Part shown: positions 1-52,085 of the stretch, piece by piece
Layout of the letters: every line of letters starts with the position of its first letter
Numbering within the stretch: the stretch's first letter is position 1
Source: Thalia democratica
Lineage: Eukaryota
Length of the DNA stretch: 64,000 nucleotides
Direction of reading: 5' to 3'
NCBI GenBank assembly: GCA_965202585.1
Contig: OZ241831.1
Span: 65,162,001 to 65,226,000, forward strand
The notes under the pieces: model-generated
Database searches by the model: none
The model's input: only the letters and a program-made list of their open reading frames with translations
Told to the model about the DNA's origin: nothing
Made by a program: the position numbers and the translations under genes

Positions 1-92
1 GTAAAGATCAACAATCAAAACTGAAATGTATAACACAAAGAAGTATTGTTCATGATTACCTTAAGACAATAGCTGAATACAATTCCAGATAG
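1..92 (+). CDS. 3' end of a C2H2 zinc-finger family gene (conserved C-terminal tail only; gene starts before the window)
   Basis: Frame from base 3 reads [29 protein letters not shown]-stop (TAG 90-92), matching the tail of the downstream paralogs. The integrity of the rest cannot be seen. Confidence 0.75.
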   Translation, partial: KDQQSKLKCITQRSIVHDYLKTIAEYNSR

Positions 93-462
93 CTTTATTG
101 TTCTAAAATAATTTAGTTGTTTTTTGTTTTCCTAGTAAAACTTTTAAAGTTACTGACTAAGTTATTTTGTTTATTTAGGTAATGTTTCCTTATGCTCGAC
201 TTGAACTTTTTTTATAAAGTAATATTTATACTTAATATTTTGACTAAAAAAAAAAGTTTTTCAAATTAAAAAATTAAAATTGATAATTTTTTTTTTGAAG
301 AAAAAATAGAAAGTTTTTTCCCTTTTTAAGCTACTTAAAACTTTTAATCGTTTATTTTAATTTCTGTCACTAATTTTGACTAATTCGTGTACCTTAAAGT
401 CAACGTCAATCTCATTTTTTACATACTACTAAACATAATTTTTAGCTCTTTAGTTTAAAACC

Positions 463-1147
463 ATGGATAATTCTGGTTAAAATAAAAATAATATGGTTGT
501 TAAAAGTATTATTTTTGATGTTTTCAGGAAAACTTTCAAAACTAAATCCTACCTGAAAATTCACAAAAGAATACATAAGGAGAGAAACTATACAAATTAG
601 ATATTTGTGACAAATAAATTAAATTCAAAAGTAGCTTAACAAAACACATGTTGGTGCATAATAGTAGTAAAGAGTTACAATGTCATGTTTGTCATAAAAA
701 CTTTGCTTAAAAATCTAATTTAAATCGACATTTAGTTACTCACACCAAAGACAAACTTTTTAAATGTGATGTTTGTGAAAAAGGTTTACTCAAAAAAGTA
801 GTGTGAAGACACATATGTTAGTTCATACTCGTTTAAAAAAACATCATTGTGAAGTTTGTGAGAAAAAAATTACACAAAAAGGTAATTTAAAACAGCACAT
901 GTTGACTTTTTAGAAGAAGCCAATTAATTTATCACTTTAGAATTCATTAAAGAGAAAAACCTTATGGTCGTGCAGAATGTGACAAATGTTTACTGCTTGT
1001 TCAAATCGAGATAATCATATACATAAGTGTCATAAAACTTTAAGTAAGGATAAACAATCAAATTTGAAGTGTAAAATACAAAGAAGTATTGTTCATGATT
1101 ACCTTGAGACAATAGACAAATACAATTCTACGAATACCTATTGTTAG
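463..1147 (+). pseudogene. C2H2 zinc-finger pseudogene (N-terminal class A)
   Basis: ATG GAT AAT TCT GGT TAA: the Gln codon of paralogs is a stop at 478-480. There is a frameshift in the first TGEKP linker, further stops, loss of most of finger 6, and a recognisable tail ending TAG at 1147. Confidence 0.9.
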
Positions 1148-3839
1148 CACTTTGTTTTTTTTTTTTTTTTAATTTAGTTTATCGAAACATTTTTAACTAC
1201 TGAGTTTTTAGTTTTACACTGACCTATGACACTCTAACTTAATTTTATTATATTTGAGTAAGTTTATAGAATTTTAATAAGTTTACTTTAAAATTCATAC
1301 ATATATAGCCATTTAATGTTTTCATCGTTGTTGCTTTCATCTAAGGTTTTTATTTGAAACTCAAAAAAGATACTGAGAACACTATGAACTACTTTAAAAA
1401 ATTAATATGGTTTTTAAATTTGAAACATTTCCATTTTAAAATATTAGTTAACATGAATAAAATTTTAGATTAGTGCCAATTAAGAAATATTAAAATTTTC
1501 ATGTCTGTGTTGTAATAAAGTAGTTGAAATAATATGTAAGGTTTTGCAAAATATAAGAATAAAAACCGCAATAAGAAGAGAAAATATATTTAGGAGAAAC
1601 TTATATGCAAAATGATGTGCTAAATTCTATTTAATAAAACTCAGTTTTTTATTATTAAAAGTTATATAAGTGTTAGTGTGCGATGAATTTGTTTTTCCCA
1701 AAAAAAAAGAAGTAATTTAGTAACTAAGTAGTTAGAATTTAAACTTGATAAAAAAGTTTAAATATAAAGCATAGTTTACTTAAAATTGTTTTTCGTCTTT
1801 AAATAGTTATAACATTTTAATAATATCACAATCAAGTTTAAAATCTTGAAAAATTTGCAAAGAATTTGCTACACAAATAAGAATATCTTATTAAACAACG
1901 TAAAAAGTAAAAGGTACGCTAAAACTTTTAACGGTGCTTAACTTTTGCATGCTTCTAGTTTTAAAATAAAAGTTTGTTTGTAATGTTGCAAGTAAACATT
2001 CAAAAAAATGAAAAATTAGTCACAACTTATATTAAAAACGACCAATTTATTACAACCGTACATGAATAATAGTTATACTTAATATATTAAAGATAAATTA
2101 AATACGGATACTTTAAAATATTCTAGTTTATTGTGTATTTTTATTCCGTTTTTATTTTATAAAAAAAATTAAATTTTTTTACTCTAAATGAGTAAATTAA
2201 AAACAACACAGCATAATACAAATGATTAACAACCGATCAGAAATAAAGTTGTAATTAACTTACTAGAGATAAGTTTTAAAAACTTAAGTTAAGTTTTAGT
2301 TTTTGAAAAAAGGTTAAATACGTACATTGCTTGCACATTTTAAATATAATGCATAATTATAAAATAAATATGAGGAATTTTATGATAATAATATTAGTAA
2401 AACGTTTAGGTTCATGCCTTACATAAAAACAGTTTGGATTACGATTAAGCGTCGACTAGCTAAAATTGTCATAAATAATAGTGTTAAAAAAATTTTTAGT
2501 AAAGAACTTTTTTGTTTTGCGATAGTGACCGAAAATTGAGGGTCTTTGAAATTCACAATCGGGCATATCTGTATATATTATAAAAAATTAGAAAGTTGGT
2601 AAAAAAACACCGACTCTTGAAAACACTCAAAAAGTCGAGCCCTAATCCAATGGCATTTTTTTCGTAAGAGCAGCGTTTTCTAGAATAAAAAAAATGTTAG
2701 TTACATTTTAAGATAAGGAAAATAATTGGAGTTAACGCTTGGAAATTTTTAAAAAATTATAAAAAAATGTTATTCTTGTTATTCAAATTATTAAATTCTT
2801 CGATAATCAAAAATTGTTAACGCTCATACTTTAATCTATCATACAGATTGATAACACGTTTAGATTGACTGTTGTATAAAGTTAGTTTGTTTATTTAAAA
2901 AAATTTAAGCTAGATTTTATAAAATTTGTTTGCATGGTGACAAAATAGTTAGTAAACATCAGAAAAAATGTTTAAAGTGTAGAAATAAAGTAAAAATTCA
3001 GTGTACTAAAAATTGTCAAGTAAAACGATTTCTTATAAAGTTATAGATAATACTGTTAAAGAGACAAATATTTCTTTCTCAAGTATGCTTAAGCACTTAT
3101 AAGAAATAAAAAAAGTTTGTTTTTTAACTATTAATAAACTTGTTAATTACAGCCCCTTCTAATATTTGATTAAATATAAGTAGCCAATCAGAAATAAATA
3201 ACTACATAAAAAAAAGTAATTAAATTTTTTTTATAGACTGCTGTATTTTAGAGAAACGAGGATCAAGAAAGCTACTTTTACTTAAATAGTTTTTCGTTTA
3301 CTACAAAGTAATACAATTTATTTAACAGTAAACATATGTTTTATTTATTGTGACTACAAGTGTGCATATAAATTATTTTAATGTGCACAAAAAATTTAAT
3401 GATATGAAAAAATATATGTTCCATTATATTTATAGTACCAGATCCTATCAAAAAATATATTCAATTTATTATTTAATATTATTTTAATTAAGATGCACTA
3501 AAACACGGTTATAGCATTTATTAAAAAGTTATAAAAATTTTTCAAATACGGTTTTATACTTACAAATTTATAGAATTAGTGATCTTATAACTAAATAAAT
3601 GAGTATGTTTGTAAATCATCAAAATATATTCATGAATCATAGAATTAAACAATAAAGATATAAATTGTGTTATTGACCAAATAAAACATGTTAATTTTTT
3701 ATGGTTTTATCTGATAGGTTACAAACTTAAAATCTTTATGTTGATATTATGATACGTTATTAACTTATAGTAAACAGATTTGACAAATGTAGTATAAAGA
3801 TATCTACTTTTAGTTGTTATAAGGTTTTGTTTGCTAACT

Positions 3840-4571
3840 ATGGATAAAAATGGACCAACTGGGAGTTATTTAAATGCTAAATGTATTACTTGTGATGTTT
3901 GCAAGAAAAGTTTCAAATATAAGTCAAATTTTACAGTTCACAAAAGATTTCATACTGGTGAAAAACCCCATAAGTGTAAAAAATGTGAGAAAACTTTTGC
4001 TTGGAAAGGCAGTTTAACGAAACACATGTTGGTACATAGTGGTATAAAAGAATTTCAATGTATGGTTTGTTTAAAAAAAATTGCATATAAACATCACTTG
4101 AAAGAGCACATGGTTACTCATACTAAAGAAAAAGCATTTCAATGTGATTTGTGTGACAAATATTTTACACTAAAAAGTAATGTAAAAACACACATGTTAG
4201 TTCATACTGGCATAAAAGATTTTCAATGTGAAATTTGTCAGAAGAAGTTTTCTAAAAAATATAATTTGAAAAGTCATATATTGATTCACACCAAACTTAA
4301 ACATCATGAATGTGATATTTGCAGGAAGAAGTTTACTCTAAAAGGAAATTTAGTAAAACACTTTAGGATTCATTTAGGAGAAAAACCGTTTGGATGTGCA
4401 GAATGTGGAGAATGGTTTACTCAAAGTTCTAGTCGAAATACGCATATAAAAACTCACCATAAGGAGTTATGTAAAGTAAAACAATCAGAACTGAAGTGTA
4501 AAATTCAAAGAAGTATTGTTCATGACTACCTTAAGACAACAATATCTGAATACAATTCTGAATATCTTTAA
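3840..4571 (+). CDS. 7-finger C2H2 zinc-finger protein, N-terminal class B (MDKNGPTGSYLNAKC...), 243 aa
   Basis: Open frame with seven CxxC..HxxxH fingers, TGEKP/LGEKP linkers and the conserved tail. ATG at 3840 is preferred over the TTG at 3831 by alignment to the class B paralog start at 47146. Confidence 0.92.
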   Translation: MDKNGPTGSYLNAKCITCDVCKKSFKYKSNFTVHKRFHTGEKPHKCKKCEKTFAWKGSLTKHMLVHSGIKEFQCMVCLKKIAYKHHLKEHMVTHTKEKAFQCDLCDKYFTLKSNVKTHMLVHTGIKDFQCEICQKKFSKKYNLKSHILIHTKLKHHECDICRKKFTLKGNLVKHFRIHLGEKPFGCAECGEWFTQSSSRNTHIKTHHKELCKVKQSELKCKIQRSIVHDYLKTTISEYNSEYL

Positions 4572-7500: not shown

Positions 7501-9254
7501 CTGTATATCTATATATAGATAATTTGTTTGCTTATTGTTTATTGTTTATTAATTTCTCAGCTATTCTGGTTATTTTGAAGCGTTTGTCAGTAATAAAAAT
7601 GTAAAGCAAATATTAAATAAAATTAAATTACAATAAGAGGAAACAAAAAGGTTTTTTAAACTAAATAGAGACACTTTATAATCAATTCTCTTATTTTTTT
7701 GTTGATATAGTTTCTAACTTAAAATGATCTAAAACAATATCGCAATGATTAATTGTATTAAATCTATATTTTTACAATTGTTAGCACAAATTTATTAGTT
7801 ATTAAATGTTTATCTATTGAGGATCTATAGGCAGCAATAAAGGTATTTTTGTGATAATTTTATATTTCTCCGCACAAACTTAAACGTATACTCTTCGATC
7901 CTAACTTTTAAATGTCTAAAAGGATATCCGATGTAGTTTATTTCAAAGAAGTAATTAAATTTTATACTATACAGCTTTGTTTAGTTCTGGTATCTGTTCT
8001 TTTAACTGCACTTTTAATACTGCTTTCGAAACATTCTCGGATTTTCTTTATTTTACTTGGAAACTTTTTTATTTATTTTAAACACGGAATATATCTAATA
8101 TAAAATAGTTTCAAAACTAACGGGAATTTCTCAGATCTATTTGGGCTTCTATAGGTTATTATCATGTACAGAATAATACTATTATAAAGTTAAAAATATT
8201 TCAACAAAAAACGTGGTAGTTTGAATTTAAGTAACAAAAATTATCTTTAAAACCTAAATAAGCATGAAATAATTTATTTTAAATACAAATTTTTAATATA
8301 TTTTTAAACATAATTACGTATATAAATGTTTTATATGAGTACTTTAAAAGAAATCATCAGTTTTTGTAAAATATATGAATCAAAGTCGCAAAAAGTTAAA
8401 ATAACAAATATTTAAATGAAAATAGTATTTAAAAGATGTGCTAGAAACTGTTTTAATAAAACTCGGTTTTTTATAATCAAAAACTAAAATAAATTTTTGA
8501 TTTACGTAAATATATTTTCTTCATAAAAAAACATTTAAATAAATGTCATGATTTAGTAAAGCTGTATAATATAGTTAAGAAACAAAGCATAGATCACTTA
8601 AAAGTTTCCTATGACAGTAAGGCATCTACACTTATAACATTTATATGACATCATAAACAAGTTTAAAAATTTAAAAATATTGCACAATCAAATTTGCTAA
8701 AATAAGCGAGTATATCGTTTCTTTTAAAAATTCAATTTTTTTTTATTGCTCTTCATATTTTTTAGGGTCCAAACTTTTAAAAAGTCTGAACCTGTATTTG
8801 GCATAAACTTTTTTTTTTATCTAGCGTTATCTGTTTTCAGCAAAACTAATTTTCGGTTTTCAATATTCTGATTAAATAATTTGTCGTTTTATTGCAAGAA
8901 AAACATATTTAAAAATTTCCCTAGGTAGAATAATAAAAACCAGTTCTTCATCTTATTTTAAATTCAAAACATTAAGATTATTAATGAGAAGATAACATGT
9001 TTTATACAAGTTTATAATTAGTACACATAAGGGTTTCTATTTAGTAGTTTATTGTAGTTCGAACAAAAGTTAAATGGTTAAATCTAATTTAATTACTACG
9101 CTTATCTTAAATTTCATGTCTATAAAAGCATTTCAAAGGGTATAGTTTGAAAATACTTTTATTTCCTTCTAAAATGATAAACTGAAACATAGAAAGGCTT
9201 CTCAAATTGTGTAATATTGTTTCTATCGGACAATGATGGGTATCAGTGGGCGTT

Positions 9255-9611: not shown

Positions 9612-10507
9612 TTTATATTGACACTAACTAATTTTCTAAAAAAGTATCGTTTGGTTTAAACTACCACAAATTAAGATAACATATCTAAACAACACAGAAG
9701 TAAAAGTTTAGAAAAATATAATAATAATTAGTTTTGTTTAGTGAAAAACAATTGTAAGTAATTAAGAAGTGTTTTCTGTCCAGATTATTACTTCATATCT
9801 CATCAAATTTGTATAAATATTAGTTTACCTACGTAAGATAAAAGAAAAATTTTAACCTAAATAAAATAAATTAGTTAAGTATTTGAAAAAAAATGATCCG
9901 GACTATAATAGAATTTTTTTATAAGTAAACATAAAATTTTTTAATTTAATAAAAAAACAGCTTAAGTCCTGTATAATAAAAAGTTTTCAAGTAATTTTAA
10001 GAGTTATAATTGTTTCAGGGTAATTAGAAAATCATTTTAGGATTTAAAAACAAAATAATTTCAGAAATGTAAACTTTTTTAATAATAATTCCAACTAAAA
10101 TAAAGTTTTATGTACAGAGCTTTGGTTATATATTATTGCTTGTTTTTAATTTTAAATTTTATAGTTGATTTTGACTTTGTATTTGTATCTTTTAGTCAAC
10201 AGGCAATCGAATAAGTTGTATAAACAAATTAAAAATAACCAGTCTTTTTGTACAAGTTGTTATTTCGAAAACAGATAATATATTAAATCATTAATATCTT
10301 ATGATAAAATAGCTATTTTTAGCTTAAATTTATGAAATTAGACGAGCTGAAATGAAAACTTTTAAACTAGGCAAATTTTATTTGTTAAATAGTTTTTAGT
10401 GATAAATAGTTGTCATTAAACAAATAATTATTCATTAATTAAAATTAAATGCACCAACCTCTAGTTTTCACATTATTAGAAATATTTTTAGCACTTAAGT
10501 TAAAATT

Positions 10508-11236
10508 ATGGGTAATTTTGGTCAAGACAAAAGTACTAAAGTTGTTAAAAATGTTTCTTGTGATGTTTGCAAGAAAACTTTCAAAACTAAATCCTACCTG
10601 AAATATCACAAAAGAATACATACAGGAGAAAAGCCATACAGTTGTGATATTTGTGACAAAAAATTTATCATTAAAGGCCATTTAACAAGTCATATACTGG
10701 TACATAGTGGTAAGAAAGAGTTTCAATGTCATGTTTGTCATAAGACATTTGCAAAAGTATCTAATTTAAAACAACATTCATTTACTCACACAAAAGATAA
10801 ACTTTTCAAATGTGAAATATGTGACAAACGTTTTGCTCAAAAAAGTCATGTAAAAAAACATATGTTGGTTCATACTGAAATAAAAGAACATCAGTGTGAA
10901 GTTTGCAAAAATAAGTTCTTTTGGAAAAGTAATTTAAAACAACACATGTTAACTCATACTAAAATAAAAGCTCTTGAATGTGATATTTGCAAGAAAAAAT
11001 TCAGTCAGAAAAGTGGTTTAATTAAACATTTTAGAATTCACTTAGGAGAAAAACCGTTTGGATGTGCAGAATGTGGAAAATGGTTTACTCAAGCTTCTAA
11101 TCGTGATACGCATATAGGAACTCATCATAAGGAACTAAATAAAGAACAACAGTTAAAACTGAAGTGTAAAATACAAAGAAGCATTGTTCATGACTATCTT
11201 AAAACAATAGACAAATACAATTCTATTTATAGTTAA
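10508..11236 (+). CDS. 7-finger C2H2 zinc-finger protein, class A, 242 aa
   Basis: Intact ORF, all 7 fingers with complete zinc ligands, conserved tail. Confidence 0.93.
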   Translation: MGNFGQDKSTKVVKNVSCDVCKKTFKTKSYLKYHKRIHTGEKPYSCDICDKKFIIKGHLTSHILVHSGKKEFQCHVCHKTFAKVSNLKQHSFTHTKDKLFKCEICDKRFAQKSHVKKHMLVHTEIKEHQCEVCKNKFFWKSNLKQHMLTHTKIKALECDICKKKFSQKSGLIKHFRIHLGEKPFGCAECGKWFTQASNRDTHIGTHHKELNKEQQLKLKCKIQRSIVHDYLKTIDKYNSIYS

Positions 11237-14439: not shown

Positions 14440-15150
14440 ATGGATTATTCTGGCCAAAACAAAAGTAATACGATTGTTAAAAGTGTTTCTTGTGATGTTT
14501 GCAAGAAAACTTTCATAACTGAATACTACCTGAAATTCCACAAAATAATACATACAGGTGAAAAATCATACAAATGGGATATTTGCGACAAAAGATTTGA
14601 CATTAATTGTAGGTTAACAAGTCGTATGCTGGTACATAGTGGTAGGAAAGAGTTTCAATGTCATGTTTGTCATAAGAAGTTTGCTCGAAAAGCTTACGTA
14701 AAACAACACATGGTTACTCACACCAAAGATAAACTTTTCAAATGTGATATATGTGAAAAAAGTTTTGCTCGAAAATATCATGTAAAAACACATATGTTAG
14801 AACATACTGGAATTAAAGAACATCAGTGTGAAGTTTGTAAGAAGAAATTTTCTCTAAAAGTTAATTTGAAACGACACATCATGATTCATACCAAATTAAA
14901 AGCACATGAATGTGATATTTGCAAGAAGAAGTTTTCACATAAAAGCCATTTAGTCAGACACTACAGAATTCACTAAGGCGAAAAACCTTATGGTTGCGCA
15001 GATTGTGGCAAATGGTTTACTGATAATTCTACTCGAAATAGGCATATACATGCTCATCATAAGGAACTTAGTAAAGAAAAGCAACAAGAATTGAAGTGTA
15101 AAATACAAAGAAGCATTGTTTATGACTATCTTAAAACAATATCTGAATAA
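14440..15150 (+). pseudogene. C2H2 zinc-finger pseudogene or truncated gene (178-aa ORF)
   Basis: TAA at 14974-14976 replaces the Leu of LGEKP. Finger 7 and the tail continue in frame to a second premature TAA (15148-15150). Finger 2 has lost a Cys (to W) and a His (to R). Confidence 0.85.
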
Positions 15151-18100
15151 AATTCAAGTATTGTAATCAAGTCAAAACAATTTTATAACTCTTTTGATGT
15201 ATAATTTTAAGTAACATAATTTATAATGTTCTGGCTTGTTTTACTATTTGATTTGATGGAGGCGTTTAAATATGTAAAAACTCTCTTTTAAAACTATAAA
15301 AAAAAACTTTTAGCATTTATAAATCTGTGTATAAATTAATGTTGAATAGATAGATTTCATATAAAGGTACGTCAGTTATAGAATCCGTAGTTGTTTTAAC
15401 TATAATAAACTAAATAAGTGTAAATTGTTTTTGTTTTGAATTTCCTGATTAAATGTAATATTCGAAAATAAGAAAAATAGATATGATTTTAAGGAAAGTT
15501 AGTTTTATACAAAATATAAAAACAACCACTTTTTAAAAAGTTAAGTTTTTTTTTTAACTAAAAAAATAATTTTTAAAATATTAGCTCAACGACTTTTAGT
15601 ATGTTCATAATCGTTTGTTTGATAAATGCTAATTAAAGGTAAAGAATTACTTTAAATTATAACATAATGAATAATGTGTTTTATGAAAATATGTGTTGGA
15701 CTTATTGAAATCAACAAATAAGTTCTTGATAAATTTATTGCTGAACATGCCTAACTAATCAATGAGTTTAAAGTTTTATTGCTTTAACTTCTAAAGTTTA
15801 ATTTACATCTTTGCCGTTATTTTAGGTTATGTGTTTTATATTTTAGCATACTTCTTAAATTAAAAATAGTATAAATACAACTAAAATACTAGTAATTTGT
15901 TAACGTATTTTGGTGTTTTTTATGCATTTATATTTCAAATAAAAACATATTTATAAAGTAGTGGTCAAAAGTCTTATTAAAACTAACTTTTGAAAACTTC
16001 AAAAAAAAAGTGAAATAAACCTTATTTAAATGTTCAAAAAATCTTTTAATTTAGATAAAAGCCATATTAATGCATTTATTGTCAAAAATAAAATCGTATT
16101 TAAATTTTAAGCTCCTATATTATAACAATTAAATGTAAAAATGATTAATATGATCTCTCAATATATTGCTTACAACTTTTACTGCACTGGAGAGTTTAAA
16201 AATTGTTAAAAAAAAAACATAAGTGAATTCTATCCAGTTTAGTGTAAGAGCAAAAACATGTAGTCAATTAAACTATAATTTATTAACTTGTATATAACAT
16301 AATTTCACAAATTAAAAATTCAACACGTCTAAAACTTCCTTATAAAATAGGTCTTAGTTTATTAGAATGTAGTATATTTGTGTCCATATAAGTGTACTAA
16401 ACGTAAAAATTATTTTTGCATACAATTTTTAAGCTTCTGTAATGTAGCAACTAAATGTTAAAAAAAAGTAAACGATTTTTCAACATATTGCTAACAATTT
16501 TTTTCTATATAGATCTGAAAAAAAGTAATTAAAAAAAAAGCTCAATCATTTTTTTTATCAAGTTATAGTCAATTTATAGTCTATTAATTTATAATTTACA
16601 AGTTGTATATAAGGTAATTTTACAATTTACTCTATACGTCTAAAACTTTATACAAAATGCGTCTTAGTGTGTTAGAGTGTAGTTAATTTGTAACATTAAA
16701 AATCTTATTTAGTCATCTTAACAGTTTATAACAGTAGTTTTTAACATTATTTATTGCGTCTAAAAATGAGCACTAACCTAAAATTATCTATAGCAATTTT
16801 TTCTACTTTTAATGAACAAATGTACAAAATCACTGTACTAAACAAAGATGCAAAAGTTATGCAAAAAAACAAATAACAGTATAACGTAATATTGTGCATT
16901 ACAAAAACAATCAAACAACTAAACTTCACAAAGACAAAAGTTAAATGACTATAAAATACTTCAAAATTTCTTGTATTTTGAGAGGATTTTTTCAAATGTC
17001 GACAAGACGTAATGAATTTGCTCCTTTTTTAAACAACCTTCCTTTTTTAATGCATATATAACGGCTCTTGATTTTTTTAAGCAAATATTACGTTATACAA
17101 TAATAACCTTACTATATATATAAGTATATATATATATATATAGAAATAACATAGACAAAATAAATTTTTGCTTGGTACAGCTGTTTCTGCGTTTAATACG
17201 CGTCCTCAGCCAAGTTTTGTTCAATATATATATATATACATAAACTTTTTGTTTTGTTACCGAGTTTTATAAAATAATATTTTAAGTTCAATTTACTGAA
17301 ATTTCTACAAGTTATATTTATTTATTTTTATTTCTTTTAACATTGTTTCATCAAAAAATTTTGTAAATAGAGTTAATAAGACTAAATTTCACTTTTTAAA
17401 GTTATTTTAGTTATATTATTGTTATTTAGATGTACTTAAAAATATAACAAAATGAAGTAAATTGAGAGTGCTACACATTCTACTAATTTTAGTTTATTAG
17501 TTTAATTTTTTGAGAAAGTATACGTTTAAATTCAACTCTTTATGTTTTTTATTAAGAAATTTAATTATATATATTTTTTAACAGCAGTAAAATATAATTC
17601 TTTAATTATGAAATTAAATTCAAGTTTATTACATTTCAATTGAAAAGTTCACTAAGTTATATATGTTGTTTTGCTAAATGTATTTAGGTTTATTATTTTT
17701 GTATAAAGTATGTTTTTTGCTATATGTATTTAAGTTTATTGTTTTGTTCTTTTTGTTTTAGATGCCCAAAGAAAGTGTTCCAACCGAAGACAAAGCTCAG
17801 AAATATTCTTTTGTTGTTTCTTTTCATTACTATAGTTAATTTGTTTTTAGGTTTTCATTTGTTGATATTCTTTAAAATTGAAATTTAAATAGTAATTTTC
17901 CAATTGAGCAGATGATATAAGTTTGTTTGTGAAATTAAGAGTTTAGTTATAAAAATTAAGAATTTTAGTTTTTGATAGCTTGTTCATTTGTTTATAGTTT
18001 TTAGTGACCCAGAATTGTTTAATGATATTTTTTTTCTCGTATCTTTCGACTTGTATATTTTCAAAATAGTTTAGATATTTTCACACTAATTATAAACTTA

Positions 18101-21760: not shown

Positions 21761-22483
21761 TTGTGTGATTACGGTCAAAACAAAAGCAATATGGTTGTTA
21801 AAAGTGTTTTTTGTGATGTTTGCAAAAAATCTTACAAAACTAAATCCTACCTGAAAATTCACAAAAGAATACATGCAGGAGAAAAACCATACAAATGTGA
21901 TAATTGTGACAAAAAATTTATTACTAAACGTAGCTTGACAACTCACATGTTGGTACATGGTGGTGAAAAAGAGTTTCAATGTCATGTTTGTCAAAAAAGT
22001 TTTGCTATAAAATCTAGATTAAAACAACATTCAGTTACTCACACCAAACTTTTTAAATGTGATTTGTGTGAAAATAGTTTTACTTATAAAAGTAGTGTGA
22101 AGACACACATGTTAGTTCATACAGAAATAAAAGAACATCAGTGTGAAGTTTGTGAGAAGAAGTTTTCTCTAAGTAGTAATTTGAATCGTAATATGTTGAC
22201 TCATACTAAAGTAAAAGCTTATAAATGTGATATTTGCAAGAAAAAATGCAGTCAGAAAAGTGATTTAGTCAAACACTTTAGAATTCACTTAGGAGAAAAA
22301 CCTTATGGTTGTGCAGAATGTGGAAAGTGGTTTACTGATTGTTCTAGTCGAAATAGACATATAAAAATACACCATAATGAACTAAGTAAAGAAAAGCAAT
22401 CAGAACTGAAGTGTAAAATACAAAGAAGTATTGTTTATGATTATCTCAAGGCAATATTTGAATACAACTCTAAATATCCTTAA
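21761..22483 (+). CDS. 7-finger C2H2 zinc-finger gene with ancestral ATG mutated to TTG (next in-frame ATG at 21791); possibly an early pseudogene
   Basis: ORF is open to the normal stop. TTG TGT GAT aligns with ATG TGT GAT at 41889. It has a 6-bp deletion in linker 3-4 (HTKLFKC vs HTKDKLFKC), His to Asn in finger 5, and Phe to Cys in finger 6. Confidence 0.7.
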   Translation: MCDYGQNKSNMVVKSVFCDVCKKSYKTKSYLKIHKRIHAGEKPYKCDNCDKKFITKRSLTTHMLVHGGEKEFQCHVCQKSFAIKSRLKQHSVTHTKLFKCDLCENSFTYKSSVKTHMLVHTEIKEHQCEVCEKKFSLSSNLNRNMLTHTKVKAYKCDICKKKCSQKSDLVKHFRIHLGEKPYGCAECGKWFTDCSSRNRHIKIHHNELSKEKQSELKCKIQRSIVYDYLKAIFEYNSKYP

Positions 22484-25732: not shown

Positions 25733-26467
25733 ATGGATGATTCTGGTCAAAACAAAAGTATTATGGTTAAAAAAACTGTTTCTTGTGATGTTTGCCAGAA
25801 AACTTTCAAAACTAAATATTACCTGAAAATTCACAAAAAAATACATACTGGAGAAAAACCATACAAATGTGAAGTTTGCGGCAAAACATTTGTTATTAAA
25901 GGTAGGTTAACAAGACACATGTTGGTACATAGTGGTAAGAAAGAGTTTCAATGTCATGTTTGTTTGAAAGAATTCGCACATAATCATGTTTTAAAACAAC
26001 ACATGGTTACTCATACTAAAGAAAAAGCTTTCAAGTGTGATATATGTGACAAAAGTTTTACTAAAAAAAGTAACGTTAAAAGACATATTTTAATTCATAC
26101 TGGAATAAAAGAATATCAGTGTGAAGTTTGCGAGAAGAATTTTTCTCAAAAAAGTCATTTAGAACAACACATGTTGACTCATACTAAATCAAAAGATCAC
26201 GAATGTGATATTTGCAAGAAGAAGTTTACTCAGAAAAGTGATTTAGTCACACATTTTAGAAATCACTTGGGAGAAAAACCTGATGGATGTTCAGATTGTG
26301 GAAAATGGTTTACTAGTAGCTCTAATAGATGTAAGCATATACGTACTTGTCATAAAGAACTAAGTAAAGAGCAACAATCAAAACTAAAGTGTAAAATACA
26401 AAGAAGTATTGTTCATGACTATCTTACGACAATAGCTGAATACAATTCTAAGGACACGTGTCCTTAG
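25733..26467 (+). CDS. 7-finger C2H2 zinc-finger protein, class A, 244 aa
   Basis: Intact ORF, 7 fingers, conserved tail; finger 7 ends HIRTCH. Confidence 0.92.
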   Translation: MDDSGQNKSIMVKKTVSCDVCQKTFKTKYYLKIHKKIHTGEKPYKCEVCGKTFVIKGRLTRHMLVHSGKKEFQCHVCLKEFAHNHVLKQHMVTHTKEKAFKCDICDKSFTKKSNVKRHILIHTGIKEYQCEVCEKNFSQKSHLEQHMLTHTKSKDHECDICKKKFTQKSDLVTHFRNHLGEKPDGCSDCGKWFTSSSNRCKHIRTCHKELSKEQQSKLKCKIQRSIVHDYLTTIAEYNSKDTCP

Positions 26468-27544: not shown

Positions 27545-28080
27545 ATAGATAATAATGGATCATCTGGAAATTACTTAAGTGCTAAATGTATTAGTTGCGA
27601 TGTTTTCAAGAAAAGTTTTATACATAAATCACAGTTGGTCTCTTTACAGAAGATTTAATACGGGGGAAAGGCCATATAAATGTGAACATTGTGACAAAAG
27701 GTAGTTTTTCACAATGCTGGTACATACTGGAGTTTTAATACTATGTTTGTCATAATTTATATTCTTAAAAAGGCCAATTAAAACTAATTTATTTACCCAC
27801 AAACACTTTTAAATGTGATTTGTGTCATAACAGTTATTTTTAAAAGGCGATGTGATAAAATATATGTTAGTTCTTACTGTAAAGGAAGATTTTTAGTGTA
27901 AAGTTTGTAAAAGGAAATTTTATTGGAAAAGTAGTATGAACCTTCATATGTTAACTCATTTGAAATAAAAAGACCATGAATGTGGTATTTGCAAGAAGAA
28001 ATTTACTTAAAAAACAAGTTTAGTTAATCATTTTAGAATTCACTTAAGAGAAAAACCATATGCTTGTGCAAAATGTTGAG
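27545..28080 (+). pseudogene. C2H2 zinc-finger pseudogene, class B, 3'-truncated
   Basis: ATA in place of ATG, then DNNGSSGNYLSAKCISCDVF, homologous to the 3840 copy. Several stops and frameshifts. Homology ends in finger 7 (TGT GCA AAA TGT TGA) and the tail is absent. Confidence 0.85.
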
Positions 28081-31146: not shown

Positions 31147-31884
31147 ATGAGTGATTCTAGTCAAAACAAAAGTAACATGATAGTTGAAAGTGTTTCCTGT
31201 TATGTTTGCAAGAAAACTTTCATAACTAAATCCTACCTGAAAATTCACAAAAGAATTCATACAGGAGAAAAACCATACAAATGTGATGTTTGCGATAAAA
31301 GTTTTACTCAAAAAAGTAATTTAAAAAGACACATGTTGGTACATAGTAAAAAGAAAAAGTTTCAATGTCATGTTTGTCATAAAAATTTTGCACGAAAAGC
31401 TCACGTAAAAGAACACATGATTACTCACACTAAAGATAAATATTTTAAGTGTGATATATGTGACAAAAGTTTTACTAAAAAAAGTAGCGTTAAAAGACAT
31501 ACTTTAATTCATACTGGAATAAAAGAACATCAGTGTGAAGTTTGCAAGAAGAAGTTTTCTCGAAAATGTAATTTGAATCAACATACGTTGACTCATACTA
31601 AATTAAAAGATCACGAATGTGATATTTGCAAGAAGACGTTTACTCAGAAAGGAAGTTTAGTTAATCACTTCAGAATTCACTTAGGAGAGAAACCTTACGG
31701 CTGTGCAAAATGTGGAAAATGGTTTACTGCTAGTTCTGATCGATGTCTGCATATACGTACTTGTCATAAGGAACTAAGTAAAGAACAACAATCTAAATTA
31801 AAATGCAAAATACAAAAAAGTATTGTTCATGACTATCTTAAAACAATATCTGATTATAATTCTAAATATTCTGATTTTCGGTAA
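31147..31884 (+). CDS. 7-finger C2H2 zinc-finger protein, class A, 245 aa
   Basis: Intact ORF, 7 fingers, conserved tail; finger 7 ends HIRTCH. Confidence 0.92.
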   Translation: MSDSSQNKSNMIVESVSCYVCKKTFITKSYLKIHKRIHTGEKPYKCDVCDKSFTQKSNLKRHMLVHSKKKKFQCHVCHKNFARKAHVKEHMITHTKDKYFKCDICDKSFTKKSSVKRHTLIHTGIKEHQCEVCKKKFSRKCNLNQHTLTHTKLKDHECDICKKTFTQKGSLVNHFRIHLGEKPYGCAKCGKWFTASSDRCLHIRTCHKELSKEQQSKLKCKIQKSIVHDYLKTISDYNSKYSDFR

Positions 31885-35763: not shown

Positions 35764-36489
35764 ATGGGTGATTCTGGTCATAACAAAAGTATGTATGTCA
35801 AAAGTGTTTCTTGTGATGTTTGCGAGAAGACTTTTAAAAATAAATTATACCTGAAATATCACAAAAGAATACATACAGGAGAAAAACCATACAAATGTGA
35901 TATTTGTGACAAAAGATTTATAATTAAAGACAGCTTAACAAGACACATGCTGGTACATAGTGGTAAGAAAGAGTTTCAATGTTATGTGTGTCATAAGAAC
36001 TTTGCTCAAAATTATAACTTAAAACTACATTACGTTACACATACCAAAGATAAACTTTTCAAATGTGATATATGTGACAAAAGTTTTGCTCGAAAAAGTC
36101 ATGTAAAAGCACATATGTTAGTTCACACTAAAATAAAAGAACATCACTGCAAAGTTTGTGAGAAGAAGTTTTCTCAGAAAAGTATTTTGAAACGTCATAT
36201 GTTGACTCACACCAAAGTGAAAGCCCACGAATGCGATATTTGCAAGAAAAAAATCAGTCAGAAAAGTGATTTAGTCAGACATTTTAGAATTAACTCTGGA
36301 GAAAAACCTTATGGATGTGCAGAATGTGGAAAATGGTTTACTCATCCTTCTGGTCGAAATAAGCATATACGTTTTCATCATAAGGAATTAAGTAAAGAAA
36401 AACAATCAGAACTGAAGTGTAAAATACAAAGAAGTAATGTTCATGACTATCTTAAGTCAATATCTGAATACAATTCTAAATATAATTAA
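35764..36489 (+). CDS. 7-finger C2H2 zinc-finger protein, class A, 241 aa (finger 6 last His to Asn)
   Basis: Intact ORF; finger 6 ends HFRINSGEKP where paralogs have HFRIHLGEKP; conserved tail. Confidence 0.88.
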   Translation: MGDSGHNKSMYVKSVSCDVCEKTFKNKLYLKYHKRIHTGEKPYKCDICDKRFIIKDSLTRHMLVHSGKKEFQCYVCHKNFAQNYNLKLHYVTHTKDKLFKCDICDKSFARKSHVKAHMLVHTKIKEHHCKVCEKKFSQKSILKRHMLTHTKVKAHECDICKKKISQKSDLVRHFRINSGEKPYGCAECGKWFTHPSGRNKHIRFHHKELSKEKQSELKCKIQRSNVHDYLKSISEYNSKYN

Positions 36490-36842: not shown

Positions 36843-36960
36843 ATACGAACTCATCATAAGGAGTTAATAAAAAACAGCAATAGAAAGTGCAAAATTGAAA
36901 AAACAATTCTTTATGACTATTTTAAAACAATATTTGAACAAAATCTAAAGATCTTTATTG
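36843..36960 (+). pseudogene. Tail-only remnant of a zinc-finger gene
   Basis: Reads IRTHHKELIKNSNRKCKIEKTILYDYFKTIFEQN, a decayed version of the family tail. It is followed by the family's typical 3' flank (gagtgatgtataaatgagtatcaaaa ~37017). No fingers lie upstream. Confidence 0.75.
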
Positions 36961-41584: not shown

Positions 41585-41872
41585 GTAATCTAATAAGTAA
41601 CATGAAACAGATATTACAACAAATCAGCCTGAATTCATTTAAAAATAATTTGTTATTTCAGAAATAGATGATACGTTAATTGAGTACTATCTTAAAATAA
41701 AATGGACCTTTTTTAGCTTCAATTATTAAGTTTAACAAACTTAGATACAATTTACAAAACGAGCATTTTTTTATAAAATAGTTTTTTTTGATTTAAAGTT
41801 TTAATTAACAATTAATTATATAATAATCTAAATTAAGTACATCAATCCTCCACTATTGAACATAACTTTTAG
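41585..41872 (+). other. Predicted 5'-UTR intron of the class A zinc-finger genes (this copy as the example)
   Basis: Conserved donor-like caacag|gtaatc and acceptor-like ttttag| 16 nt before the ATG. Homologous pairs: 10203-10491 (GC donor), 14121-14423, 21480-21744, 35452-35746. Confidence 0.55.
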
Positions 41873-41888
41873 CACTTAAGTTAAAACT

Positions 41889-42614
41889 ATGTGTGATTCT
41901 GGTCAAAACATAAGTCAAATGGTTTCGAAAAGTGTTTTTTGTGATGTTTGTAAAAAGACTTTCAAAACTAAATCCTACCTGAAATATCACAAAAGAATAC
42001 ATACAGATGAAAAACCATACAAATGTGATATTTGTGACAAAAAATTTATAATTAAAAGTAACTTAACAAGTCACATGTTTGTACACAGCGGTAAAAAAGA
42101 CTTTCAATGTTTTGTTTGTCATAACAATTTTGCTCGCAAATCCGATTTAAAACAACATTTAGTTACTCACACAAAGGATAAACTTTTTAAATGTGTTGTT
42201 TGTGACAAAAGTTTTACTACAAAAGGTAATGTGAAGAGACACATGTTAGTTCATACTGGTTTAAAGGAACATCATTGTGAAGTCTGCAAGAAGAAGTTTT
42301 CCCAGAAGGGCGATTTGACACGGCATGTGTTGACTCATACTAATGTGAAAGAACATGAATGTGATATTTGTAAAAAGAAGTTTTCTCAGAAAGGAAGTTT
42401 AGTCAGACACTTTAGAATTCACTTAGGAGAAAAACCTTATGGTTGTGCAGAATGTGGAAAATGGTTTACTGACAATTCTCATCGAAATAGGCATATTAAA
42501 ACTCATCATAAGGAGTTAAGTAAAGAGCAACAATCAGAACTGAAGTGTAATATTCAAAGAAGCATTGTTTATGAATATCTTAAAACAATATCTGAATACA
42601 ATTCGAAGTATTAA
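41889..42614 (+). CDS. 7-finger C2H2 zinc-finger protein, class A, 241 aa
   Basis: Intact ORF, all 7 fingers complete, conserved tail. Confidence 0.93.
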   Translation: MCDSGQNISQMVSKSVFCDVCKKTFKTKSYLKYHKRIHTDEKPYKCDICDKKFIIKSNLTSHMFVHSGKKDFQCFVCHNNFARKSDLKQHLVTHTKDKLFKCVVCDKSFTTKGNVKRHMLVHTGLKEHHCEVCKKKFSQKGDLTRHVLTHTNVKEHECDICKKKFSQKGSLVRHFRIHLGEKPYGCAECGKWFTDNSHRNRHIKTHHKELSKEQQSELKCNIQRSIVYEYLKTISEYNSKY

Positions 42615-43331
42615 AATCAAGTTTATCTTAAATAATTAAATACTTTTATTGATGTATAATTTTGAATAATATATAATAGTACACTAGTATATTATGCTCT
42701 CTGTTTAACTATTTGATTTGATGAAACTATTTATAAAGGTAAAAGAATCTCTTTAAAAATTATAAAATTTTAGTTTTTAAATATTTATAAATATCTGTAC
42801 AATTTAATGTTAAATAGATCGATTTCTTATACAAATACTTAGGCTATAGAATTTATGACTGTTTATAATAGTTTATTTACAAACTATTCAAACCTTTTTT
42901 TTATTGAATTTGGTTATCAAATTTCGTGTTCTGCAACTAAAATACTAGATTTGGTTTTAAGGAAAGTTAATTTTATGACATACAAGGAAAAAAACACTTT
43001 AAAATTTTTAAACTACATTTACTGTTAAACTTAAATAATGGTTAACTAAAGCAGATACTTTTTTTATTATTTAGATTAAGGAATTATATAATGTTGCTAA
43101 TCGTTTGTTTGATAAATGCTCGATTTAACTATTGAATTTAATTTTGATTTAATATGATAAATAACATTTTATTTAAAGATGTTTGTCGAATTTATTGTAA
43201 ATAATAGAAAAAATTTGCTACTTTTATGGCCAAACCATGTCTAAACAATTAATTTATTTGAAGCAAACTTTGACATTTTTTTATTCAAACTTTTAAGTTT
43301 TAATATATTTAAATCTCTGCTTTTATATTAC

Positions 43332-44028
43332 GTGAAATTAATAAACTACTCAAAGTTTTAAGTGTGATATTTGCGAGAAAGCTTTTAATTAAAAATCACA
43401 AGTTGAATGTCCATAAAACAACTCATACTATACTAAAACAAAATCGTACAAACGTTAAGATTGCGACAAACTTTTTCTAAGAAAAGCAATTTAACAAGAC
43501 ATACGTTGGTACTAAGTGGTATAAAAGGTTTTCAATGTTATGTTTGTGGAAAATACTTCGCACAAAGGTTATTTAAAGCGACATTTAGATACTCAAACTA
43601 AAGGAAAACTATACAAGTGTGATTTATGTTTAGAGTTTATGCAAGGAACTGTATTTTGAAGAAACATATGCTACTTCATATGTGATTAAAAGAGCATTAG
43701 TTTGAAGGTTGTAAGAAAAATTGCTCAAAAACATATTTTAAATAACTTGACTCATACTAAAGTATAAGCTCATGAATGTGATATTCGGAAGAAAAACTTT
43801 TCAATGAAGGATAATTTAGTCAATCACTTTATAATTCACTTAGGAGAGAGACCGTATGGTTGTGCAGAATGTGGAAAATGGTTTACTTACGCTTGTGCAA
43901 GAACTAGACATATTCGTACTTGTCATAAGAAACTAAGCAAAGAGCAACAATCAGAACTGAAGTGTAAAATACAAAGAACTTTTGGTCATGACTATCTTTA
44001 GTCAATATCTGAACATAATCTTAATTAG
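43332..44028 (+). pseudogene. Degenerate C2H2 zinc-finger pseudogene (finger 1 ends LNVHKTTH, third N-terminal class)
   Basis: KCDICEKAF at ~43360, then many stops and frameshifts through fingers 1-6. The 3' part [17 protein letters not shown]...[25 protein letters not shown] is well preserved. The 5' boundary is approximate. Confidence 0.85.
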
Positions 44029-47000: not shown

Positions 47001-47142
47001 AAATAAAAATATGGTTTATTAAAAAGTATATTGTAGTTATATTTTAAGTTGTATTTAAAAATGTGTATGAATTTGATTTACTTAATATATTATTTCTTTT
47101 TATTAGTTTTTCGCATTAAATAGTTTTTTTCTAAGAAGTTGA

Positions 47143-47872
<730 letters not shown>

Positions 47873-50800: not shown

Positions 50801-51407
50801 ATTCGTAACATTATCAAAAAAAAATTGTTCAATTTACGAATAGATGATCAAATAAAAAAGCATTATGTTTTGTTTTAGATTTATTAAATCATAGTGTAAG
50901 TGTTTAGAGATATATAAATGTTATTTGAGTCGGGTGAGGATGGAATATTATACTGACAGTTTATTTTACCTAATTTTAACTCTATTTGTTTGAATTAACT
51001 ATATAAATAGCGTTTTATGAAATGATACAAAAAGTTATAATTACAGATAGCATTATATCTAAACTATTACAAAAAATTAAATTTTAAGAGAAAGGCAATT
51101 GTTTGCTAAGTTAAAAATACAATTATGTATAAAATCAATTAGTTTTGTAAATTAAAGAATGTTTATTAATAAAAACTGTAAAAAACTACAAGAAAATTTA
51201 TTCTTTAATTAGAAATGTGATGATAAATTATCTAATGAAAATAACTGAACTATAACCAGTTTTAATTATACTTTCAGAGCACTTTTAACTAGATCTTATT
51301 TTTATATTAAGAGTTGAAAAATTTTCATTTCATACATATTTTATAGTTAAGTAAATAGAAACATCGAAAATTATTTTAGTTTGGATATTCTGAATATCTG
51401 AATATAA

Positions 51408-51981
51408 CTGAATATTCACAAAACAATTCATGCGGGAGAAAAGCCATACAAATGTAAAGACTGTGGTAAAAGTTTTAAGCGTAAAGGTGATTTGACAAAA
51501 CACATGTTGGTACATAGTGGTAAGAAGGATTTCCAATGTAATGTCTGTTTAAAATTATTTGCTCAAAAATGTAGTTTAAACCGACACATACAAACTCACA
51601 CTAAAGATAAACCATTCAAATGTAGCGAGTGTGATAAAAGCTTTACTCGAAAAGATAATAAAAAAGCTCATATGTTAATTCATATTGGTAAGAAAGTTTT
51701 TAAATGTGAAGTTTGTAAAAAGAAGTTTTAAAGAAAAGAAAATTTAAATTCTCATATGTTGACTCACACAAAAGTAAAGGCTATGAATGTGATATTTGCA
51801 AAAAGAAACTTATACATAAAAGTCAATTAGTTGATAACTTTAGAATTCACTTAGGAGAAAAACCTTATGGTTGTACGGAATGTGGAAAGTGGTTTACTGA
51901 ATGTTCTAATCGAAATAGACATATGAAAATTCACCATAAGGAGTTAAGTGAAGATCAACAATCAAAACTGAAGTGCAAAAT
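51408..51981 (+). pseudogene. C2H2 zinc-finger pseudogene truncated at both ends (last copy of the array)
   Basis: Starts at LNIHKTIHAGEKP (end of finger 1). Fingers 2-4 are intact, finger 5 has a TAA (51729-51731), and a frameshift precedes finger 6. The tail stops at LKCKI, where the inverted duplication begins. Confidence 0.85.
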
Positions 51982-52085
51982 AAGCGTTATAAAAGTAGGT
52001 TTTAAAACAAACACGCTAACAGTTTTTTTATAAGTATGTGGTGTACAAAAATACCTCTTGATCATCTAATCATACAACACATGCT

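What the first reader, a model, noticed from the sequence alone, without database searches (positions are those of the whole stretch)
1..52000. Diversifying 7-finger C2H2 gene cluster: fixed scaffold, hypervariable DNA-reading residues, shared C-terminal tail (candidate KRAB-ZF-like system)
Seen: 15 tandem loci. Every complete copy has exactly 7 fingers with position-specific scaffolds, but helix positions -1/2/3/6 differ between paralogs. Finger 3 reads YHHE, KSNQ, RAYQ, ISRQ, HHVQ, RAHE, QYNL, RSDQ; finger 7 reads QSST, QSNT, DSTR, DSSR, SSNK, ASDL, HSGK, DSHR. No N-terminal KRAB, SCAN, BTB or ZAD domain is present, since only ~16-17 aa precede finger 1. Established: clustered, fast-evolving C2H2 families with variable recognition helices and a constant effector (vertebrate KRAB-ZFPs, insect ZAD-ZFPs) often target transposons. 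Inference: this may be an independent lineage-specific version, with the effector at the C-terminus.
Basis: partly seen in the sequence, partly recalled or inferred. Interest (0 to 1): 0.8.

Follow-up and report, generated by a model that had tools for sequence, protein, structure and literature searches.

The report
Giant fast-evolving zinc-finger gene array
The window is a slice of a multi-megabase tandem array with at least about 460 copies of a small seven-zinc-finger gene. The DNA-reading residues are under diversifying selection while a private 35-residue C-terminal tail is held constant, so it is a new, undescribed counterpart of the KRAB, FiNZ and ZAD zinc-finger families, and its targets are still untested.

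Summary
Window 1-52000 carries 15 same-strand loci of one C2H2 family: 7 open full-length genes, 1 copy with two stops, and 7 fragments or pseudogenes. Open copies have a 17-aa N-terminus, 7 positionally homologous fingers and a 35-aa tail.

There are 63 loci in 264 kb of contiguous sequence, and at least 463 tail-bearing loci genome-wide, almost all on one contig between about 59.5 and 66.5 Mb. Only about 24% are intact, which fits birth-and-death turnover.

- Helix positions -1/2/3/6 have omega about 0.75-1.7. The rest of the protein has 0.25, the tail 0.16-0.22 and the zinc and core residues 0.02.
- Site models favour a positively selected class (M8 vs M7, p = 2e-6).
- 12 of the 13 sites assigned to that class are contact positions (Fisher p = 6e-12).

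No N-terminal domain exists. The tail occurs nowhere else among 1.84 billion representative proteins except in fragments of this family from Tara Oceans metagenomes.

Untested: expression (no RNA runs), transposon targeting, and an effector role for the tail.

Another first-reader note in this scan (s1-311156) reports a similar cluster elsewhere in this genome.

Verdict: a new member of a known kind, of moderately high interest.

The parts
1..89 (+). 3' end (finger 7 plus tail) of a broken copy that starts about 600 bp before the window
   Evidence: The tblastn HSP runs from -606 to 89, covers query residues 7-240 and has 3 stops.
463..1129 (+). Pseudogene copy
   Evidence: Two HSPs lie in different frames, with 9 stops in total. 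Finger 3 carries a stop.
3840..4571 (+). Intact 7-finger gene (243 aa) with the second N-terminal type (MDKNGPTGS...)
   Evidence: Open ORF with 7 intact fingers and the tail.
10508..11236 (+). Intact 7-finger gene (242 aa)
   Evidence: (zinc-finger Pfam families only).
14440..15156 (+). Recently broken copy
   Evidence: The ORF stops right after finger 6, and finger 7 and the tail continue in the same frame. There are 2 stops over query residues 4-239. Finger 2 has lost a Cys.
21761..22483 (+). Open copy with signs of decay
   Evidence: TTG stands in place of the family ATG. The first His of finger 5 is replaced by Asn. There is a 2-aa deletion in the finger 3-4 linker.
25733..26467 (+). Intact 7-finger gene (244 aa)
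27645..28076 (+). Pseudogene fragment (about fingers 2-6)
   Evidence: 8 stops, 43% identity.
31147..31884 (+). Intact 7-finger gene (245 aa)
35764..36489 (+). Open copy in which finger 6 has lost its last His (RINSGEKP)
36843..36950 (+). Isolated tail fragment
   Evidence: tblastn covers query residues 203-240 at 55% identity.
41889..42614 (+). Intact 7-finger gene (241 aa), used as the reference copy
   Evidence: AlphaFold model: mean pLDDT 78.8, seven beta-beta-alpha fingers.
42510..42611 (+). The conserved C-terminal tail (34 aa after the last zinc-binding His) in the reference copy
   Evidence: 12 invariant columns across 16 tails. Omega is 0.16 by NG86 and 0.22 by ML. It is predicted as a helix when finger 7 plus tail is folded alone (pLDDT 85). 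Elsewhere it is found only in fragments of this family.
41585..41872 (+). Putative 5'-UTR intron of the reference copy: donor-like CAG|GTAAT at 41585 and acceptor TTTTAG at 41867-41872, 16 nt before the ATG. Alternatively the acceptor is a spliced-leader trans-splice site.
   Evidence: Both motifs are conserved in the upstream alignment of the 8 copies. An in-frame TAA at 41877-41879 lies between the acceptor and the ATG. This is inferred from sequence only, with no RNA evidence.
43348..44019 (+). Old pseudogene
   Evidence: 10 stops, 45% identity.
47158..47866 (+). Pseudogene
   Evidence: Three HSPs in three frames (two frameshifts) and 1 stop.
51417..51982 (+). Pseudogene lacking finger 1
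   Evidence: One frameshift and one stop.

Best explanation
The window is part of a very large, lineage-private tandem array of single-coding-exon genes.

Each intact gene encodes a protein of about 28 kDa with three parts:
- A short, unconstrained N-terminus.
- Seven tandem C2H2 fingers, enough to read about 21 bp of DNA.
- A constant, 35-residue, probably helical C-terminal tail.

Shown:
- The array grows by tandem duplication of units of about 4-6 kb. Homology extends into the spacers.
- Copies diverge mainly at the base-contacting helix positions -1/2/3/6, under diversifying selection.
- About three quarters of the loci have died through stops and frameshifts.
- Zinc ligands, hydrophobic core, linkers and the tail stay under purifying selection, so the surviving copies are working DNA-binding proteins.

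Inferred:
- The tail is the shared business end, a docking helix for one common cofactor.
- The ever-changing fingers track fast-evolving genomic targets, most likely transposons or satellites. This would be a parallel of tetrapod KRAB-ZFPs and cyprinid FiNZ-ZNFs.

My odds: about 0.85 for a diversifying birth-and-death family of functional DNA readers; about 0.4 for a transposon or repeat-directed role; about 0.35 for the tail being a cofactor-recruiting effector.
For: Size and layout:
- At least 158 protein matches at E <= 1e-10, nearly all on contig C7 between 62.2 and 66.5 Mb and mostly on the + strand.
- For the tail protein, 150 of 150 scored candidates match, out of 568 candidates.
- A 35-nt tail DNA pattern gives 463 hits against 0 for the reversed control.
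- 63 loci lie in 264 kb, of which 15 are full-length and open.

Unit duplication: blocks of spacer homology lie in collinear order at 65-75% identity.

Function maintained:
- A 241-codon open frame has a chance probability of 7.5e-11 at this base composition, yet the paralogs differ by a median dS of 0.69.
- Omega is 0.02 at core residues, 0.16-0.22 in the tail and 0.25 at non-contact sites.

Diversifying selection:
- Omega at contact sites is 0.85 (NG86), 1.24 (MG94), and 0.75-1.66 (GY variants). The hypothesis that it equals the background value of 0.25 is rejected with 2dlnL = 83.
- M2a vs M1a gives 2dlnL = 17.4 (MG94) and 21.2 (GY94). M8 vs M7 gives 26.0.
- 12 of the 13 sites with posterior > 0.8 are -1/2/3/6 positions, Fisher p = 6e-12.
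- 12-15 distinct contact quadruplets per finger among 15 copies.

No other domain: Pfam finds zinc-finger families only, N-terminal omega is 0.82, and there is an in-frame stop upstream of the ATG.

Tail private to the family: 15 hits in 1.84 billion representative proteins, all finger-plus-tail fragments.

General frame: ZNF copy number tracks transposon load across metazoans whatever the accessory domain, and FiNZ-ZNFs show the same signature of selection (PMC10547256).
Against: - There is no RNA evidence at all for this organism, so expression, splicing and timing are unknown.
- Mean omega at contact sites cannot be told from 1 (2dlnL = 1.4). The positive class rests on my own site-model code, 15 sequences, branch lengths fixed up to a scale, and a star-like tree.
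- Paralogs in tandem arrays undergo gene conversion, which inflates M7/M8 tests. I did not test for recombination.
- dS is high (0.36-1.02), so contact sites are near saturation.
- The tail has no match to any known effector, fold or motif. Its hydrophobic moment is no higher than in shuffles. The two structure models disagree on its shape.
- No transposon link was tested.
- Four of the 15 open copies have lost one zinc ligand.
Confidence: 0.6

Rival explanations
1. This is an expanded family of ordinary gene-regulatory transcription factors. The paralogs diversify to control different host genes, for example in the development or life-cycle stages of this animal. They do not target transposons, and the tail is a common activation or repression motif.
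For: The anatomy and selection pattern fit this reading as well as the transposon one. Large C2H2 expansions in cephalopods have been linked to the nervous system rather than only to transposons (PMC12513265, title and abstract seen). No transposon ORF lies inside the window.
Against: Hundreds of copies with about 75% pseudogenes, and positive selection on contact residues, are the signature of arms-race families rather than stable regulators (PMC10547256). No paralog pair is conserved enough to suggest fixed targets, since contact quadruplets are nearly all distinct.
Confidence: 0.2
2. This is a largely decaying macrosatellite-like gene array. The variability at helix positions reflects relaxed constraint rather than adaptive change. 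The tail is merely a structural or DNA-contacting extension of finger 7, or a nuclear-localisation or stability element, and not an effector.
For: 76% of loci are dead. Mean omega at contact sites is not different from 1. Four open copies lack a zinc ligand. The full-length model packs part of the tail as a strand next to finger 7. C-terminal extensions that contact DNA are known in Kaiso, which appeared only as a weak fold-search row, so this is a lead from my own knowledge and not a match.
Against: A class with omega > 1 is preferred over the nearly neutral model under two codon parameterisations. That class falls on contact sites 12 times out of 13. Core, linker and tail residues are strongly constrained across dS of about 0.7, so many copies have been kept working for a long time.
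Confidence: 0.12
3. The family reads tandem satellites or chromosome-end repeats rather than dispersed transposons. It would work as heterochromatin or satellite-binding proteins co-evolving with fast-changing satellites.
For: The array lies 1.2-8.2 Mb from the end of a 67.7-Mb contig, counting the outlying loci from 59.5 Mb. A 36-bp satellite array (the 10-kb piece examined is entirely satellite, and repeat-derived ORFs span about 22 kb) sits inside it. Some fast-evolving ZAD-ZNFs of Drosophila are reported to bind heterochromatin and satellites; that is my own knowledge and was not checked here.
Against: No test was done. One embedded satellite is weak evidence in a genome that is probably repeat-rich.
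Confidence: 0.08

Closest known systems
KRAB zinc-finger proteins (KZFPs) of tetrapods
   Same: Hundreds of clustered, tandemly duplicated C2H2 genes. Birth-and-death turnover. A fixed finger scaffold with positive selection at helix positions -1/2/3/6. One constant non-finger module shared by all members.
   Different: There is no KRAB domain and no N-terminal domain at all. The constant module is a 35-aa C-terminal tail with no similarity to KRAB. Genes have a single coding exon and a fixed 7 (rarely 8) fingers, not variable long arrays. Transposon binding and a TRIM28-like partner are untested.
FiNZ-ZNFs of cyprinid fish (Wells et al. 2023, PMC10547256)
   Same: An independent lineage-private expansion to hundreds of copies, defined by a short family-specific sequence next to the fingers. 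M1a/M2a and M7/M8 tests are significant, with contact residues enriched among selected sites (one search compared).
   Different: FiNZ is N-terminal, whereas this module is C-terminal. FiNZ genes have been shown to be expressed at zygotic genome activation and to repress young transposons. Nothing of that kind is known here.
ZAD-ZNFs of insects
   Same: A lineage-specific, clustered, rapidly evolving C2H2 family with one shared accessory module.
   Different: ZAD is an N-terminal zinc-coordinating dimerisation domain (PF07776), and it is absent here. The tail has only one invariant Cys and no predicted zinc site. A homodimer prediction gave no verdict.
Effector-less poly-ZNF expansions in other invertebrates (for example cephalopods, PMC12513265)
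   Same: Large C2H2 expansions without KRAB, SCAN, BTB or ZAD.
   Different: Here every member shares a constrained, private C-terminal tail and a rigid 7-finger plan.

Membership tests
Tandem C2H2 (Krueppel-type) zinc-finger proteins | Several consecutive C-x2-C-x12-H-x3-5-H fingers joined by 7-residue TGEKP-like linkers | tested here: met
   Seven fingers per open copy. Pfam zf-C2H2 and zf-H2C2_2 match with E = 1e-32 to 1e-45. The AlphaFold model shows seven beta-beta-alpha units.
KRAB-ZFP | N-terminal KRAB domain (PF01352) | tested here: not met
   No KRAB hit. Only 17 aa precede finger 1, with omega 0.82. An in-frame stop lies upstream of the ATG.
KRAB-ZFP | Recruits TRIM28/KAP1 and silences transposons | not testable with these tools
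   No RNA, binding or interaction data exist.
ZAD-ZNF | N-terminal ZAD domain (PF07776) | tested here: not met
   No hit in Pfam.
SCAN-ZNF / BTB-ZNF | N-terminal SCAN or BTB domain | tested here: not met
   No hit in Pfam. The BACK-Kelch ORF at 61310-62740 belongs to a separate neighbouring gene.
FiNZ-ZNF | Conserved N-terminal FiNZ sequence; restricted to cyprinids | tested here: not met
   There is no conserved N-terminal sequence. The FiNZ sequence itself was not compared.
Arms-race type ZNF family (functional class, not a homology family) | Clustered tandem duplicates with birth-and-death turnover | tested here: met
   63 loci in 264 kb, 24% intact. At least 463 loci genome-wide.
Arms-race type ZNF family (functional class, not a homology family) | Positive selection focused on base-contacting residues | tested here: met
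   M2a/M1a p = 1.6e-4 and 2.5e-5; M8/M7 p = 2e-6. 12 of 13 selected sites are contact positions. Caveats: own code, 15 sequences, recombination not modelled.
Arms-race type ZNF family (functional class, not a homology family) | Members bind and repress transposons | not tested
   This needs a transposon library of this genome plus motif prediction or DAP-seq.

The most novel reading that the evidence does not exclude
The 35-residue C-terminal tail is a new, independently evolved effector domain. It would make this array of at least 460 loci a separate chordate invention, in a pelagic tunicate, of a zinc-finger-based transposon or repeat silencing system, alongside KRAB in tetrapods and FiNZ in cyprinid fish. 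It would differ in having the effector at the C-terminus and a rigid 7-finger reader.
Probability: 0.3. Interest if true: 0.75.

Novelty: new member of a known kind. Interest (0 to 1): 0.58.

Why it matters
[quoted passage not shown] A private, several-hundred-copy zinc-finger family with the selection signature of KZFPs and FiNZ-ZNFs would be another independent case of animals using expanding DNA-reader arrays against fast-changing genomic targets. That would support the general rule proposed by Wells et al. 2023.

The short constant tail gives a concrete, testable handle. Tethering it to a reporter or pulling down its partner could reveal which silencing or activating machinery such a system plugs into when TRIM28-KRAB is absent.

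I found no full-length member of the family in the protein collections searched, only short fragments. Genome annotations of this lineage probably miss one of its largest gene families.

Tried and rejected
- More paralogs from the rest of the cluster.
- Tree-based per-branch substitution counts. I did not work around this and used likelihood site models that sum over ancestors instead.
- RNA evidence. No RNA run holds the sequence or exists for the species label. I did not use read laying, because the only two runs are low-coverage DNA, probably from the assembly's own sample.
- Homodimer prediction for finger 7 plus tail: no verdict, score 0.01. This is evidence neither for nor against binding.
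- Tail look-alikes:
  - ESM Atlas by features: none.
  - Foldseek against the PDB with the finger 7 plus tail model: nothing at E <= 0.001.
  - Word-indexed protein search of residues 200-241: 1 candidate, none scored. This is weak, because the reference copy has unusual residues at the conserved words.
- Amphipathic helix idea. The hydrophobic moment is 0.58, against 0.56 +/- 0.29 in shuffles, so it is not supported.
- Resemblances recalled from memory (Mad1 SID-like 'IQ...DYL', a CoRNR-like L-x3-I-x3-I). I rejected these as chance-level and they were not tested.
- A hidden N-terminal domain in the 'long open frame' copies (270-333 aa). In the sampled region these are 8-finger variants or chance-open AT-rich upstream sequence.
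- The gene being carried by a transposon. Spacer homology is collinear between units, and no transposase or RT ORF of at least 150 aa lies in the window.
- Rfam: no RNA family in the window.
- Organism. I did not identify it myself. Earlier notes of this scan call it a pelagic tunicate. The Tara Oceans hits and the genome size, within the published salp range of 742-901 Mb (PMC10686999), are consistent with that.
Full report
WHAT IS THERE

The window is very AT-rich (GC 0.19-0.28 per 2 kb). A scan of all six frames for C-x2-C-x12-H-x3-5-H finds 64 fingers, every one on the + strand.

- Seven are open from the family start to the tail: 3840, 10508, 21761, 25733, 31147, 35764, 41889.
- One has two stops (14440).
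- Seven are fragments or multiply broken pseudogenes.

The open copies are 240-245 aa. They consist of 17 residues, seven fingers separated by 7-residue linkers, and a tail of about 35 residues (consensus [35 protein letters not shown]).

Pfam sees only zinc-finger families.

THE ARRAY IS MUCH LARGER THAN THE WINDOW

The window is C7:65162001-65226000 of an 802-Mb assembly.
- A six-frame search of that genome with one copy gives at least 158 matches at E <= 1e-10, at 64-79% identity. Nearly all lie on C7 between 62.2 and 66.5 Mb and on the + strand, with two on C8.
- For the 37-aa tail alone, 568 candidates were found. All 150 scored ones match, and all lie in the same regions.
- A 35-nt degenerate DNA pattern from the tail gives 463 hits with up to 3 mismatches, against 0 for the reversed control.

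In the resulting 264 kb of contiguous sequence there are 63 loci, one per 4.2 kb. Fifteen of them (24%) are full-length and open.
- Two of these have 8 fingers, through two different single-finger insertions, so '7 fingers' is the rule and not a law.
- Four have lost one zinc ligand.

Units share collinear blocks of spacer homology at 65-75% identity, against 74-80% in the coding part. This is what unequal crossing-over of whole units of about 4-6 kb would leave.

GENE STRUCTURE

The 400 bp upstream align among most copies. Sixteen nucleotides before the ATG lies a conserved pyrimidine-rich TTTTAG. In the reference copy an in-frame TAA (41877-41879) lies between it and the ATG. About 290 nt further up is a conserved CAG|GTAAT.

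I read this as a non-coding first exon plus a 5'-UTR intron, or as a spliced-leader acceptor. Either way it gives no room for a hidden N-terminal domain. This is inference from sequence only.

ARE THE OPEN COPIES REAL GENES?

At this base composition a codon is a stop with probability 0.092, so a 241-codon open frame has a chance of 7.5e-11. Yet the 15 open copies differ from each other by dS 0.36-1.02, median 0.69. They have therefore been kept open by selection for a long time.

The 15 proteins align without gaps inside fingers. The same finger in different paralogs is 78% identical outside the contact sites, against 48% between different fingers of one protein, so fingers are positionally homologous.

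Results by partition (entropy and NG86, IQ-TREE MG94+F3X4 on a fixed tree; '-' means not computed or not reported):

| Partition | Mean column entropy (bits) | Omega, NG86 pooled | Omega, IQ-TREE MG94+F3X4 |
|---|---|---|---|
| Contact sites -1/2/3/6 | 1.96 | 0.85 | 1.24 |
| Helix positions 1 and 5 | 0.82 | 0.41 | - |
| Other scaffold | 0.81 | 0.43 | - |
| Linkers | 0.61 | 0.20 | - |
| Scaffold, linkers and helix 1/5 together | - | - | 0.32 |
| Zinc ligands and core | 0.13 | 0.02 | - |
| N-terminus | 1.68 | 0.82 | - |
| Tail | 0.56 | 0.16 | 0.22 |
| All non-contact sites | - | 0.24 | 0.25 |

For the contact partition, omega = 1 is not rejected (2dlnL = 1.4), but omega = 0.25 is (2dlnL = 83). 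GY variants give 0.75-1.66.

iqtree2 would not give ancestral states, so I wrote pruning-likelihood site models. These sum over ancestors and use branch lengths fixed up to a scale.
- MG94: M2a vs M1a gives 2dlnL = 17.4 (p = 1.6e-4). M8 vs M7 gives 26.0 (p = 2e-6), with 10% of sites at omega 1.6.
- GY94: the same tests give 21.2 and 26.0.
- Of the 13 sites with posterior > 0.8 for the positive class, 12 are -1/2/3/6 positions and the 13th is position +1 of finger 7. None lies in the core, linkers, N-terminus or tail. Fisher p = 6e-12.

Caveats:
- The code is my own, with naive empirical Bayes posteriors.
- There are only 15 sequences.
- The tree is star-like.
- Contact sites are near saturation.
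- Gene conversion was not modelled, and it is known to inflate these likelihood-ratio tests.

The positional enrichment is hard to explain by any of these artefacts. The absolute claim 'omega > 1' is less secure than the relative one.

THE TAIL

It is constrained: omega 0.16-0.22, and 12 invariant columns in 16 sequences, including one Cys.
- The full-length AlphaFold model (mean pLDDT 78.8) gives helix-strand-helix, with confidence falling towards the end.
- Finger 7 plus tail folded alone (mean pLDDT 85) gives one long helix.
- The fold is therefore not settled.

I found nothing similar:
- No Atlas look-alike.
- No PDB fold match.
- No Pfam family.

A profile of the tail run against 1.84 billion representative proteins finds only 15 proteins. 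All are short finger 5-7 plus tail fragments of this same family. Those I traced sit on Tara Oceans marine metagenome contigs of the same GC content and at paralog-level identity.

A homodimer prediction gave no verdict. The tail is not more amphipathic than shuffles.

So the tail is a constrained, family-private module. That it is an effector is inference.

ORGANISM AND CONTEXT

I did not identify the organism myself. Follow-up notes of this scan on other windows call it a pelagic tunicate.

The two Salpa genome papers among the listed results (PMC5174732 and PMC10686999) contain no occurrence of 'zinc finger', and the one mention in a salp transcriptome paper is unrelated.

First-reader notes report further C2H2 tandem families in this genome, some with N-terminal coiled coils, and one 'effector-less' cluster on another piece (s1-301209, s1-301247, s1-311156). 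I did not examine those.

COMPARISON WITH WHAT IS KNOWN

Wells et al. 2023 (PMC10547256) showed three things:
- ZNF numbers track transposon load across metazoans, independently of the accessory domain.
- ZNFs of many animals are predicted to bind transposons.
- The cyprinid FiNZ family, about 700 genes in zebrafish, shows M1a/M2a and M7/M8 positive selection enriched at contact residues and represses young transposons.

The present family has the same genomic and evolutionary signature. It fails the membership tests for KRAB, ZAD, SCAN, BTB and FiNZ, because it has no N-terminal domain at all. I therefore file it as a new member of the known class of 'lineage-specific, diversifying tandem-ZNF families'. 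Its distinctive points are the rigid 7-finger plan, the single coding exon and a short C-terminal constant module.

WHAT REMAINS OPEN

Expression, targets and the tail's partner. Rival readings cannot be excluded with the tools available:
- Ordinary host-gene regulators.
- A mostly decaying array with relaxed contact sites and a purely structural tail.
- Satellite readers.

The strong constraint on the scaffold and tail, and the site-specific omega > 1 class, argue against the decay reading.

Noticed in passing
L008-L010 (C7:65037500-65060000, about 125-102 kb upstream of the window): A 36-bp satellite array (unit TTTTTACTGAAAGAACGTTGCGGAACTTTTTCTTGA, 93% matches) sits inside the zinc-finger cluster. 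All 10 kb of L009 is satellite, and repeat-derived ORFs span about 22 kb in total. No ZNF locus was found between about 72.5 and 103.3 kb of the 264-kb sample.
   Followed up: partly
window 60389-62740 (+): A gene with BACK and Kelch-repeat domains is embedded in the ZNF array. I suspect part of a BTB domain in upstream exons, but Pfam did not detect one. Its closest named relatives (KLHL5) are only 23-28% identical. Unnamed metagenome proteins reach 37-77%, which suggests another lineage-expanded family.
   Followed up: partly
window 52085-52245 and 52729-53114: Spacer blocks that normally lie upstream of a ZNF gene (39479-39640 and 39073-39477) recur here in inverted orientation, at 88% and 73% identity. 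This is an inverted partial unit at the point where the local run of ZNF loci stops.
   Followed up: no
L004:4819-5631 and L015:6308-7120: Two full-length 8-finger variants (270 aa). The extra finger was inserted at different places, between fingers 1 and 2 in one and before finger 1 in the other, so finger number can change by single-finger duplication.
   Followed up: partly
G000 C8:8.60-9.32 Mb, C2:6.64 and 8.01 Mb, C7:59.5-60.1 Mb: Small outlying groups or single loci that carry the same tail lie outside the main array. In the 62.1-62.5 Mb part of the array the orientation is mixed, unlike the mostly + strand core.
   Followed up: no
window 3798-3900 compared with 10499-10570: There are two N-terminal types, MGDSGQNKS... 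and MDKNGPTGS.... The second type forms its own clade on the tree (b71820, w3840, b34819, b124271, b141018, b146308) and has a different upstream sequence.
   Followed up: partly
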